A stretch of DNA of 63,687 bases from Octopus bimaculoides (GCF_001194135.2 NC_068991.1:64109190-64172876), one strand, 5' to 3'. Positions 55,930 through 57,565 are shown, numbered from the stretch's first letter. Made by a program: numbers and translations. Notes: generated from the letters alone by a model not told the origin.

Positions 55930-56003
55930 CTGTCTCGGGTAAAGGTGGAAGTTACTGTCTCAAGTTATGCTGAGAATGTAGCTTCCACCTTTACGTAAGG
56001 CAG
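55930..56003 (+). ncRNA. Candidate pri-miRNA hairpin
   Basis: 33-position stem with a 17-bp near-perfect core (55939-55955/55978-55994), a 2x2 loop, 5 bp and an 8-nt apical loop. The lower stem has two mismatches. CNNC motif at 56011-56014. Confidence 0.45.
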
Positions 56004-57565
56004 CATAGCCCCTCATCTATCTCAACTTTTGAAAATCAGAGAAATCTGTGAAACAAGTCTTTAAAATTTAAAAGTAAAAAATCTAAACGAATCCCAGTGC
56101 ATTTTCGACATGTTTGTTCTATATGTGTTCACGTGCGGAATAAAGTATATATATATATATATATATATNNNNNNNNNNNNNNNNNNNNNNNNNNNNNNNN
56201 NNNNNNNNNNNNNNNNNNNNNNNNNNNNNNNNNNNNNNNNNNNNNNNNNNNNNNNNNNNNNNNNNNNNNNNNNNNNNNNNNNNNNNNNNNNNNNNNNNNN
56301 NNNNNNNNNNNNNNNNNNNNNNNNNNNNNNNNNNNNNNNNNNATACGTAGAGAGTAATGTAAAAACACTACGGAGGATATATTATAAATAATTAAGATTA
56401 TTTATGAATATAACAATGGCCAAGCATATTATCATAAAACATGAAGAAGAGCGTTTATAATTATGATCAAGTCACAATTATAACTAAGATGGTTAAAAAA
56501 GACCTTACATGCTAAAAATAGCAGCCAAAACTGCTATAAAACCTTTATATCACTCATATCATTTTTCCTCACGATAACAATTGTTTTCTGGCGACATGAC
56601 AAATAGAATACACATCTTGAAAATAATTGGTTAATTCCCTATTGCAATTTTGGCGTTAGGGACCACTTAAGGGACCCATTCGCCTCGTCAGGGGAAATAT
56701 TCCTATAGATAGAAATCAAAACTAGTCTTTACCTTGGGGTTAGCATGAATCCCGATCGGCAATAGAAATGTTTTCACCTCTACTTGTGCATGTAACTTGA
56801 ATTCAAGATTTGAATTCAAACGACATGCACAGCGCTTATGTGTGTGTGTGTGCGCGTGTGCGTGCGCGTGCGCGCGCGTTTATATAGACACATATCGTAC
56901 AAGGAATATTTTAGCGGTTGCATTTTTAGTATGTAAGATCCATTGGAAATTCCGACGGAGGCCACATAATTGAAACTTCGAAGTAAGTGTTAAACTTCTC
57001 GTAAAAACTTACTAAATATGCTAATATACCTAATCTTATTAACATGTGATAGTCAAGTTTAATGCTTGACTATTTATATATGCAATATGCAACTATTCAA
57101 GAAAAATGTATATTTATGCATATATACTCACAGAGGTATATTCACGTTTGACTGAAAAAATCATAAAATACCTATAAAATGTGTGCATATACATATATAT
57201 ATATATATACATATTTATATATATATATANNNNNNNNNNNNNNNNNNNNNNNNNNNNNNNNNNNNNNNNNNNNNNNNNNNNNNNNNNNNNNNNNNNNNNN
57301 NNNNNNNNNNNNNNNNNNNNNNNNNNNNNNNNNNNNNNNNNNNNNNNNNNNNNNNNNNNNNNNNNNNNNNNNNNNNNNNNNNNNNNNNNNNNNNNNNNNN
57401 NNNNNNNNNNNNNNNNNNNNNNNNNNNNNNNNNNNNNNNNNNNNNNNNNNNNNNNNNNNNNNNNNNNNNNNNNNNNNNNNNNNNNNNNNNNNNNNNNNNN
57501 NNNNNNNNNNNNNNNNNNNNNNNNNNNNNNNNNNNNNNNNNNNNNNNNNNNNNNNNNNNNNNNNN

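What the first reader, a model, noticed from the sequence alone, without database searches (positions are those of the whole stretch)
55930..56014. Pri-miRNA-shaped hairpin beside a SINE
Seen: GUAAAGGUGGAAGUUAC pairs with GUAGCUUCCACCUUUAC (17 bp, one GU), followed by a 2x2 loop, UCUCA/UGAGA and an 8-nt loop. The lower stem CUGUCU/AGGCAG brings the stem to 33 positions. CCTC (CNNC) lies 17 nt after the predicted 3' cut at 55994. GU pairs favour the + strand. Established: a stem of about 33-35 bp plus CNNC at +16 to +18 is the Microprocessor signature, and coleoid cephalopods have many lineage-specific miRNAs. Predicted arms are AAAGGUGGAAGUUACUGUCUCA (5p) and AGAAUGUAGCUUCCACCUUUAC (3p); I do not recognise either.
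Basis: partly seen in the sequence, partly recalled or inferred. Interest (0 to 1): 0.7.

Follow-up and report, generated by a model that had tools for sequence, protein, structure and literature searches.

The report
Stable orphan hairpin beside a SINE
The hairpin is real, unusually stable and shaped roughly like a microRNA precursor, but nothing available here shows it is a microRNA gene, and it is most likely one of the many inert inverted repeats found in repeat-rich animal DNA.

Summary
Bases 55930-56003 fold on the + strand exactly as described: 33 stem positions, a 17-bp helix with one G:U, a 2x2 loop, a 5-bp helix and an 8-nt loop. The energy is -43.9 kcal/mol (z = -9.2). It is the strongest fold in the window that is not a microsatellite, and it occurs there only once.

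The microRNA reading could not be tested. No cephalopod DNA, small-RNA data or MirGeneDB sequences were reachable.

What could be tested is mixed:
- For: arm geometry, 2-nt overhangs, CNNC at +15/+17, and all three wobble pairs favouring the + strand.
- Against: no basal UG, no apical UGU, an 8-nt loop, and a helix that continues 8 bp below the supposed basal junction. No Rfam family comes near its threshold. None of the six candidate 8-mer seed sites appears in the stored octopus miRNA target tables.

The hairpin begins where an old tRNA-derived SINE copy loses homology to its relatives. No target-site duplication encloses it. Equally strong hairpins occur about once per 14-60 kb in such DNA, far outnumbering miRNA genes.

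Most likely it is a neutral local inverted repeat (about 0.6). A transposon-borne hairpin is about 0.2 and a true miRNA about 0.07.

The parts
55930..56003 (+). Core hairpin: 33 stem positions per side and an 8-nt terminal loop
   Evidence: RNA fold -43.9 kcal/mol, z -9.21. It persists unchanged in 141-nt and 274-nt contexts. Inverted repeat I1 has 33-nt arms that are 79% complementary at DNA level.
55939..55955 (+). 5' arm of the 17-bp helix (GTAAAGGTGGAAGTTAC)
   Evidence: Read directly. The only other match in the window at 3 or fewer mismatches that is not a chance hit is its own partner arm.
55978..55994 (+). 3' arm of the 17-bp helix (GTAGCTTCCACCTTTAC)
   Evidence: It differs from a perfect complement by one transition, which gives U55952.G55981.
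55918..55925 (+). Outer left arm GCTATGCT, which extends the helix below the proposed basal junction
   Evidence: Inverted repeat I14, 8/8 complementary to 56002-56009. It is paired in the MFE folds of the longer contexts.
56002..56009 (+). Outer right arm AGCATAGC
55941..55962 (+). Hypothetical 5p arm AAAGGUGGAAGUUACUGUCUCA (prediction only)
   Evidence: Geometry: 11 positions above 55930 and 22 below the apical junction, with 2-nt overhangs against 55973-55994 (derived). No reads are available. It is unique in the window.
55973..55994 (+). Hypothetical 3p arm AGAAUGUAGCUUCCACCUUUAC (prediction only)
   Evidence: Same geometry. Unique in the window.
56009..56014 (+). CNNC motifs (CCCC and CCTC) at +15 and +17 from the predicted 3' cut
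   Evidence: Read directly.
55760..55914 (+). Old tRNA-derived SINE copy in the same orientation as the favoured hairpin strand. It is homologous to other window copies only up to about 55914.
   Evidence: blastn finds at least 7 diverged copies, the best being 51648-51795(-) at 69%. A-box-like TAGCTTAGTGG is present. The Rfam tRNA match is 19.3 bits, below the gathering score of 29. ARAGORN finds none.
56027..56030 (+). First run of 4 or more T after the SINE start. This is a possible Pol III stop 24 nt past the hairpin base.
   Evidence: Pattern scan. Its role is inference only.

Best explanation
This is an imperfect inverted repeat of about 92 bp (55918-56009) in non-coding, repeat-rich DNA. 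It starts where an old tRNA-derived SINE copy breaks off. It most likely arose after the SINE inserted, through a local rearrangement that created an inverted copy of adjacent sequence. A replication template switch is the best-documented way to make such near-perfect stems in one step. It has since picked up a few substitutions and one 6-nt indel. It is not a demonstrated gene. If a transcript crosses it on the + strand, the RNA would fold into the 33-position hairpin. That hairpin is a possible but sub-optimal Drosha/DGCR8 substrate, so at most it would be a young, unconserved source of rare small RNAs. Shown here: the structure, its exceptional stability, its single occurrence in the window, the break in SINE homology, the absence of any known-family match, and the motif inventory. 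Inferred: the origin by inverted duplication, the younger age relative to the SINE, and the lack of function.
For: Structure and rarity are established. The arms align over about 39-45 nt at about 85% identity with one 6-nt indel, and the outermost 8 bp are perfect. This is the pattern of a decaying inverted duplication, not a stem trimmed to 35 bp with single-stranded flanks. The SINE copy is old: 69% identity to its closest window relative, a changed B-box-like motif, and no target-site duplication left. The central 17 bp carry only one transition, which fits a younger event. The SINE's usual 3' module is missing and is not found downstream of the hairpin, so a rearrangement happened at about 55915. 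Base rate: one such non-microsatellite hairpin in 58 kb here, and three at -47 kcal/mol or lower in 42 kb of two unrelated repeat-rich eukaryote-like loci. That compares with 162-164 annotated miRNA genes per octopus genome (PMC9699675). In primates, more than 6,000 suitable hairpins made by template switching yielded at least 18 miRNA genes (PMC10710096). No Rfam family reaches threshold anywhere in the window. Two of three Microprocessor sequence motifs are absent and the loop is 8 nt.
Against: The geometry fits Microprocessor rules better than a random inverted repeat needs to. Both rulers (11 from the base, 22 from the apex) give the same cut. CNNC is at the right distance. The lower stem is looser than the duplex region. 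All three wobble pairs favour one strand. No outgroup sequence was available, so template switching is a proposed origin and not a demonstrated one. Absence of other copies was tested only in 58 kb of sequence.
Confidence: 0.6

Rival explanations
1. It is the hairpin of a mobile element: the 3' module of a SINE subfamily that differs from the other window copies, or a small MITE-like palindromic element. On this reading it exists in many copies genome-wide.
For: It directly abuts a SINE in the same orientation, at the point where the relatives carry their own 3' module. Other SINEs in this window carry internal hairpins in several copies, for example GGGCGAAATGCTTAGCGGTATTTCGTC, which occurs 5 times. 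The outermost 8 bp of the repeat are perfect, as in terminal inverted repeats.
Against: There is no second copy in the window by blastn with word size 7, by pattern search with 3 mismatches, or by an unfiltered covariance-model search. The same window holds at least 7 copies of the neighbouring SINE family and 5 of another. No target-site duplication flanks the hairpin or the SINE plus hairpin. There is no similarity to the 3' ends of the window's LINE relatives.
Confidence: 0.2
2. It is a canonical, lineage-specific miRNA gene. It would be transcribed by Pol II, cut by Drosha about 11 bp above the 55930/56003 junction and then by Dicer. The products would be AAAGGUGGAAGUUACUGUCUCA (5p, the likelier guide because its 5' end sits in three A:U pairs) and AGAAUGUAGCUUCCACCUUUAC (3p).
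For: The stem has 33 positions. The arms are 22 nt with 2-nt overhangs at both ends. CNNC lies at +15/+17. The + strand is favoured by 7.7 kcal/mol. It is single-copy in the window. Coleoid cephalopods gained many novel miRNA families (PMC9699675), if the window is from one.
Against: There is no basal UG at -14 (55927-28 is CA) and no UGU/GUG at the 5' end of the loop. The loop is 8 nt. There are 8 further base pairs below the supposed basal junction. No Rfam family matches; sub-threshold hits occur on both strands and reflect hairpin shape only. The arm strings are absent from 8.3 million full texts. The six candidate 8-mer seed sites are absent from the stored parts of the octopus target tables, which hold about 2,900 miRNA-target rows. 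No neighbouring hairpins suggest a cluster. The prior from base rates is well under 1%.
Confidence: 0.07
3. It is simply a double-stranded RNA element inside a longer transcript, such as an intron or UTR. It would act, if at all, as a substrate for ADAR editing or another dsRNA-binding protein and not for Drosha.
For: A 33-position, nearly perfect duplex is long enough to bind dsRNA-binding domains. In octopus most A-to-I editing lies in introns and 3' UTRs, where hairpin substrates are enriched (PMC9699675).
Against: There is no evidence that the locus is transcribed. No exon, CpG island or gene was recognised in the window. The taxon is unverified.
Confidence: 0.07
4. It is a SINE-driven Pol III transcript. 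Transcription would start at the SINE's tRNA-like A/B boxes, run through the hairpin and stop at TTTT (56027-30). This would give an RNA of about 270 nt, with a tRNA-like part followed by a hairpin, whose hairpin is released without Drosha, as in the tRNA-miRNA units of murine gammaherpesvirus 68.
For: The SINE and the favoured hairpin strand share the same orientation. A-box-like TAGCTTAGTGG is intact. There is no T4 run between the SINE start and 56027. The hairpin folds independently within the 274-nt RNA.
Against: The tRNA-like part is degenerate: 19.3 bits against a gathering score of 29, and ARAGORN is negative. The B-box-like motif reads GGTTTCGCTTCC where relatives have GGTTTCGATTCC. 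About 100 nt separate the tRNA-like fold from the hairpin, so a tRNase Z-type release would not free it. Most genomic SINE copies are silent (general knowledge).
Confidence: 0.03

Closest known systems
Canonical animal pri-miRNA hairpins (Drosha/DGCR8 substrates)
   Same: A stem of about 33 positions, predicted 22-nt arms with 2-nt 3' overhangs, a downstream CNNC, a looser lower stem and a well-paired duplex region.
   Different: No basal UG or apical UGU. The loop is 8 nt. The helix continues 8 bp below the putative basal junction. There is no evidence of expression, precise processing or conservation, and no sequence family match.
Hairpins created by replication template switching (Monttinen et al. 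2023, PMC10710096)
   Same: A near-perfect stem that appears as a local inverted copy in otherwise unstructured, non-coding DNA. Most such hairpins never become genes.
   Different: The origin is not demonstrated here. It needs an ancestral or outgroup sequence that lacks one arm.
Transposon-derived hairpins and MITE-derived miRNAs (for example the human mir-548 family from Made1; from my own knowledge)
   Same: Palindromic arms with perfectly matched termini, sitting among transposons.
   Different: No second copy in the window, no target-site duplication, and no similarity to any other element found here.
SINE 3' stem-loops recognised by the partner LINE's reverse transcriptase (for example UnaSINE1/UnaL2; from my own knowledge)
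   Same: A stem-loop at the 3' side of a tRNA-derived SINE, in the sense orientation.
   Different: It is not shared by the related SINE copies. No terminal short-repeat tail or duplication follows it. It does not match the 3' ends of the LINE relatives retrieved.
tRNA-linked Pol III pre-miRNAs of murine gammaherpesvirus 68 (from my own knowledge)
   Same: A tRNA-like Pol III promoter upstream, the hairpin downstream, and a T-run terminator after it.
   Different: About 100 nt of SINE body lies between them. The tRNA-like part is degenerate. No transcript evidence exists.

Membership tests
miRNA gene (MirGeneDB-type criteria) | Hairpin with at least 16 complementary positions between the two arms | tested here: met
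   A 17-bp helix plus 5 bp in the upper stem.
miRNA gene (MirGeneDB-type criteria) | Reads of 20-26 nt from both arms with homogeneous 5' ends and 2-nt offsets | not testable with these tools
   No small-RNA data are accessible. The overhangs are only predicted from the fold.
miRNA gene (MirGeneDB-type criteria) | Presence of the locus in a second species (the rule used for novel octopus families in PMC9699675) | not testable with these tools
   No cephalopod DNA was reachable.
miRNA gene (MirGeneDB-type criteria) | Not a repeated or transposon sequence | tested here: inconclusive
   Single copy in 58 kb. The genome-wide count is unknown, and the hairpin abuts a SINE.
Optimal Microprocessor substrate | Stem of 35 +/- 1 bp flanked by single-stranded basal segments | tested here: inconclusive
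   There are 33 positions from 55930/56003, but a further 8 bp (55918-25/56002-09) pair beyond a 6-nt bulge.
Optimal Microprocessor substrate | Unstructured apical loop of 10 nt or more | tested here: not met
   The terminal loop is 8 nt (55963-70). It is larger only if the 5-bp apical helix melts.
Optimal Microprocessor substrate | CNNC 16-18 nt downstream of the 3' cut | tested here: met
   CCCC at +15 and CCTC at +17.
Optimal Microprocessor substrate | Basal UG at -14 and apical UGU/GUG | tested here: not met
   55927-28 is CA. The loop starts AGUU.
Any Rfam 15 RNA family | Score at or above the family's gathering threshold | tested here: not met
   There are 0 matches in the whole window at the gathering threshold. 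The best match at the hairpin is mir-302, 23.7 bits against 55.
Annotated octopus miRNAs (Zolotarov et al. 2022) | Seed or arm identity with a listed miRNA | tested here: inconclusive
   The arm strings and six candidate 8-mer sites are absent from the stored supplements. However, no sequence table is among the held supplements (the paper places its miRNA predictions at MirGeneDB) and two tables were cut when stored.
MITE | Terminal inverted repeats, a target-site duplication and multiple dispersed copies | tested here: not met
   Inverted termini are present. No duplication flanks 55918-56009 or 55930-56003, and no other copy exists in the window. The genome-wide count is untested.
3' module of the adjacent SINE family | Shared by related SINE copies and enclosed with the SINE by one target-site duplication | tested here: not met
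   None of the window copies aligned (6 sequences) carries it. Copy 51648-51815(-) shows what an intact 3' module, (ATT)n tail and duplication look like. No duplication surrounds the SINE plus hairpin.

The most novel reading that the evidence does not exclude
The hairpin is a young, lineage-specific miRNA born at the broken 3' end of a SINE. It would be either a canonical Pol II/Drosha substrate or, more unusually, part of a Pol III read-through transcript driven by the SINE's tRNA-like promoter and ended by the TTTT at 56027-30. Either case would be a concrete example of how the large miRNA expansion reported for soft-bodied cephalopods draws on rearranged transposon flanks.
Probability: 0.07. 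Interest if true: 0.45.

Novelty: new member of a known kind. Interest (0 to 1): 0.17.

Why it matters
If it were a real miRNA, it would add one species- or genus-level family and a documented birth site next to a SINE. That bears on the open question of where the many novel cephalopod miRNAs came from; Zolotarov et al. state the source is unknown. As it stands, it mainly shows that shape alone cannot identify a miRNA. In this kind of DNA, equally strong hairpins occur every few tens of kilobases, several hundred times more often than miRNA genes.

Tried and rejected
1. Metagenome scan for AAAGGTGGAAG-N(10-40)-CTTCCACCTTT. None of the 120 extends beyond 14 nt of identity, and they look like bacterial terminator-type hairpins.

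2. Exact-product look-ups of the two ORFs that overlap the hairpin. Neither is on record.

3. A pseudo-protein made of all reading-frame segments across the SINE and hairpin, meant to reach gene calls on assemblies of sequencing runs. It gave 0 hits, so the collection does not hold such ORFs from this organism.

4. The window's LINE reverse transcriptase as an entry to the source genome. The best relatives are only 55-61% identical and come from anonymous ENA/JGI contigs. Four of their loci (L121, L122, L134, L135) contain neither the SINE nor the hairpin.

5. Viral and prokaryotic genome collections. These gave only single-arm or SINE-core chance hits.

6. Literature string searches for the arms and for the SINE core. 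Nothing relevant was found.

7. Target-site duplication search. The best match is a 6-mer, which is not significant. A 14-nt complement between 55743-56 and 55924-37 is within chance expectation by my own estimate, so I did not build on it.

8. Homology between 55915-56168 and the 3' modules of two related SINE copies. Not significant.

9. Assembly artefact. Rejected because the arms are imperfect (79% over 33 nt, with an indel) and the hairpin lies 160 nt from the nearest gap.

10. Host-gene search. No convincing exon or CpG island was seen. I did not run a full domain scan of the window.

Full report
**Observation.**
- six lower pairs (CUGUCU/AGGCAG) and one isolated G:U;
- a 17-bp helix (55939-55955 with 55978-55994) with a single G:U at U55952.G55981;
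- a 2x2 internal loop, a 5-bp helix (UCUCA/UGAGA) and the 8-nt loop AGUUAUGC.

The energy is -43.9 kcal/mol against -19.5 +/- 2.7 for dinucleotide shuffles (z = -9.2, 0 of 200 as good). The reverse strand folds less well (-36.2, z = -7.0). All three wobble positions are G:U on + and would be A.C on -. That has a 1-in-8 chance, so it is only a weak hint of strand-specific constraint. CNNC lies at +15 and +17 from the predicted 3' cut.

I folded every 90-nt window of the 63.7-kb sequence on both strands (11,240 windows, mean -13.5, sd 6.5). This locus ranks third overall and first among sequences that are not microsatellites. The hairpin is unchanged when folded within 141 nt or 274 nt of context.

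The helix does not end at 55930/56003. GCTATGCT (55918-25) is perfectly complementary to AGCATAGC (56002-09). In longer folds it pairs across a 6-nt bulge. Read as DNA, the object is an inverted repeat of about 92 bp. Its arms (45 and 39 nt) align at about 85% identity with one 6-nt indel.

**Surroundings.**
Bases ~55760-55914 are a tRNA-derived SINE copy in + orientation.
- It carries A-box-like TAGCTTAGTGG.
- Its Rfam tRNA match is 19.3 bits, below the gathering score of 29, and ARAGORN finds nothing.
- At least seven diverged relatives lie in the window. The closest is 51648-51795(-) at 69% identity.

Alignment shows homology up to about 55914 and none beyond. The relative at 51.6 kb continues with its own 3' module and an (ATT)n tail. 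It also has a clear target-site duplication (ACGCCGTTGACCAG / ACGCTGTTGACAG). The focal copy has the hairpin in that place instead. The missing 3' module does not reappear downstream of the hairpin. No target-site duplication can be found for the SINE or for the SINE plus hairpin; the best match is a 6-mer, which is not significant.

The first run of four T after the SINE start is at 56027-30, 24 nt past the hairpin base. The window as a whole is draft-quality, repeat-rich DNA. It has 20 N gaps and 36% G+C, with LINE fragments, several SINE families and many TA/TG microsatellites. I found no recognisable host exon or CpG island.

**Is it a repeat?**
Within the window it is not.
- blastn with 7-nt words finds only the self-inverted match.
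- Searches for each arm and each predicted 22-mer with up to 3 mismatches find only the two arms themselves.
- A covariance model of the hairpin, run without filters, finds only the locus itself on both strands, plus weak microsatellite hairpins.

As a positive control, another SINE-borne hairpin (GGGCGAAATGCTTAGCGGTATTTCGTC) is found five times in the same window. This excludes a very abundant family. It does not exclude one with hundreds or a few thousand copies.

**Is it a known RNA?**
No Rfam family reaches its gathering score anywhere in the window. At the hairpin the best match is mir-302 at 23.7 bits against 55. Comparable sub-threshold matches to unrelated miRNA families occur on both strands, so they reflect hairpin shape only.

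The arm sequences occur in none of about 8.3 million full texts. In the supplements of the octopus miRNA study (PMC9699675), neither the arm strings nor the six 8-mer target sites for plausible 5p/3p starts occur. The stored tables hold about 2,900 miRNA-target rows. The held supplements include no miRNA sequence table; the paper says its miRNA predictions are at MirGeneDB. Two tables were also cut when stored. This is therefore only a partial negative.

**How well does it fit Microprocessor rules?**
In favour:
- 33 stem positions;
- the 11-from-base and 22-from-apex rulers agree on a 5p start at 55941;
- 2-nt overhangs at both ends;
- CNNC at the right distance;
- a looser lower stem.

Against:
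- no UG at -14 (55927-28 is CA);
- no UGU/GUG at the 5' end of the loop;
- an 8-nt loop, where 10 or more is preferred (as summarised in PMC10710096);
- 8 further base pairs where single-stranded basal flanks are expected.

The fit is acceptable but not distinctive.

**Base rates.**
This window has one such hairpin in 58 kb. Two unrelated repeat-rich eukaryote-like loci, fetched for another purpose, have three non-microsatellite hairpins at -47 kcal/mol or lower in 42 kb. Extrapolated to a gigabase-scale genome, that is tens of thousands or more. Each octopus species has 162-164 annotated miRNA genes. In primates, more than 6,000 suitable hairpins made by template switching gave at least 18 miRNA genes. 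The prior for any one such hairpin is therefore well below 1%. The favourable features raise it to a few per cent.

**Best explanation.**
It is a local inverted repeat created after the SINE inserted, by a rearrangement at about 55915 that also removed the SINE's 3' module. Since then it has decayed slightly. The contrast in wear supports a younger age. The SINE is at 69% identity to its nearest relative, its B-box-like motif is altered and its duplication is gone. The central 17 bp of the hairpin carry only one transition. If the two were equally old and neutral, an intact 17-bp run would be unlikely (my estimate is under 1%). Purifying selection on an RNA stem would explain the same contrast, and I cannot separate the two without an outgroup. 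Replication template switching is the documented one-step route to such stems (PMC10710096), but here it is inference. I put this reading at about 0.6.

**Rivals.**
- A transposon-borne hairpin with many genomic copies: about 0.2.
- A genuine lineage-specific miRNA: about 0.07.
- A dsRNA element in a longer transcript, for example an editing substrate: about 0.07.
- A Pol III read-through RNA from the SINE promoter to the TTTT at 56027-30: about 0.03.

**Limits.**
No cephalopod or other source-genome DNA could be reached. Exact-product look-ups failed. A six-frame pseudo-protein query found nothing. The window's LINE has only 55-61% relatives in anonymous assemblies that lack the SINE and the hairpin. 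The viral and prokaryotic collections gave chance hits only.

As a result, genome copy number, conservation, expression and even the taxon remain untested.

**Verdict.**
This is a real and striking hairpin that is correctly described. Its shape is compatible with a pri-miRNA, but there is no positive evidence that it is one, and the odds favour an ordinary, probably young, inverted repeat. Interest is low unless small-RNA reads or conservation say otherwise.

Noticed in passing
window 51520-51815 (-): The closest relative of the focal SINE is a complete insertion. It has a tRNA-like head, a 3' module, an (ATT)n tail and a clear target-site duplication (ACGCCGTTGACCAG upstream, ACGCTGTTGACAG downstream). 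It is a useful template for what an intact copy looks like.
   Followed up: partly
window 2352-2378, 15496-15522 (-), 40414-40440, 40630-40656, 49486-49512: A second tRNA-like SINE family carries a strong internal hairpin (GGGCGAAATGCTTAGCGGTATTTCGTC). Five copies differ by at most 2 mismatches, so the family is young and abundant. Two of the copies lie 216 nt apart at 40.4-40.7 kb. Their 90-nt folds reach -43 kcal/mol.
   Followed up: partly
window ~10500-14400 (-): A degraded LINE with a reverse-transcriptase domain, followed by an ORF with C2H2 zinc-finger-like motifs and interrupted by an N gap. The best relatives are only 55-61% identical. They are full-length elements (endonuclease, RT, zinc fingers) in anonymous ENA/JGI assemblies.
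   Followed up: partly
window 59789-60304 (+): A 172-aa open frame with a Cys/His pattern (LCTFCQREVETISHLFWYCEYVQAFW) that resembles the C-terminal zinc-binding region of LINE ORF2 proteins. No domain search was run.
   Followed up: no
window 55101-55247 and other TA/TG-rich stretches: Microsatellite-like TA/TG runs give sub-threshold Rfam matches to mir-297, mir-466, mir-1277 and mir-3149 (up to 37.8 bits against a gathering score of 90). These are low-complexity artefacts, not miRNA genes.
   Followed up: yes
window 8811-8900: A (GGCT)n-type microsatellite next to an N gap gives the lowest fold energy in the window (-49.6 kcal/mol).
   Followed up: no
window 55929-55936 and 55954-55961: The 8-mer ACTGTCTC occurs twice, 25 nt apart, inside the 5' arm of the hairpin. 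It brackets GGGTAAAGGTGGAAGTT. This is marginal against chance by my estimate (about 0.08) and might be a trace of how the repeat formed.
   Followed up: no
L121 9311-9400, L121 14561-14650, L122 6821-6910: Two unrelated repeat-rich eukaryote-like contigs from ENA assemblies contain three very strong non-microsatellite hairpins (-47.7 to -50 kcal/mol per 90 nt). This shows how common such structures are in this kind of DNA.
   Followed up: partly
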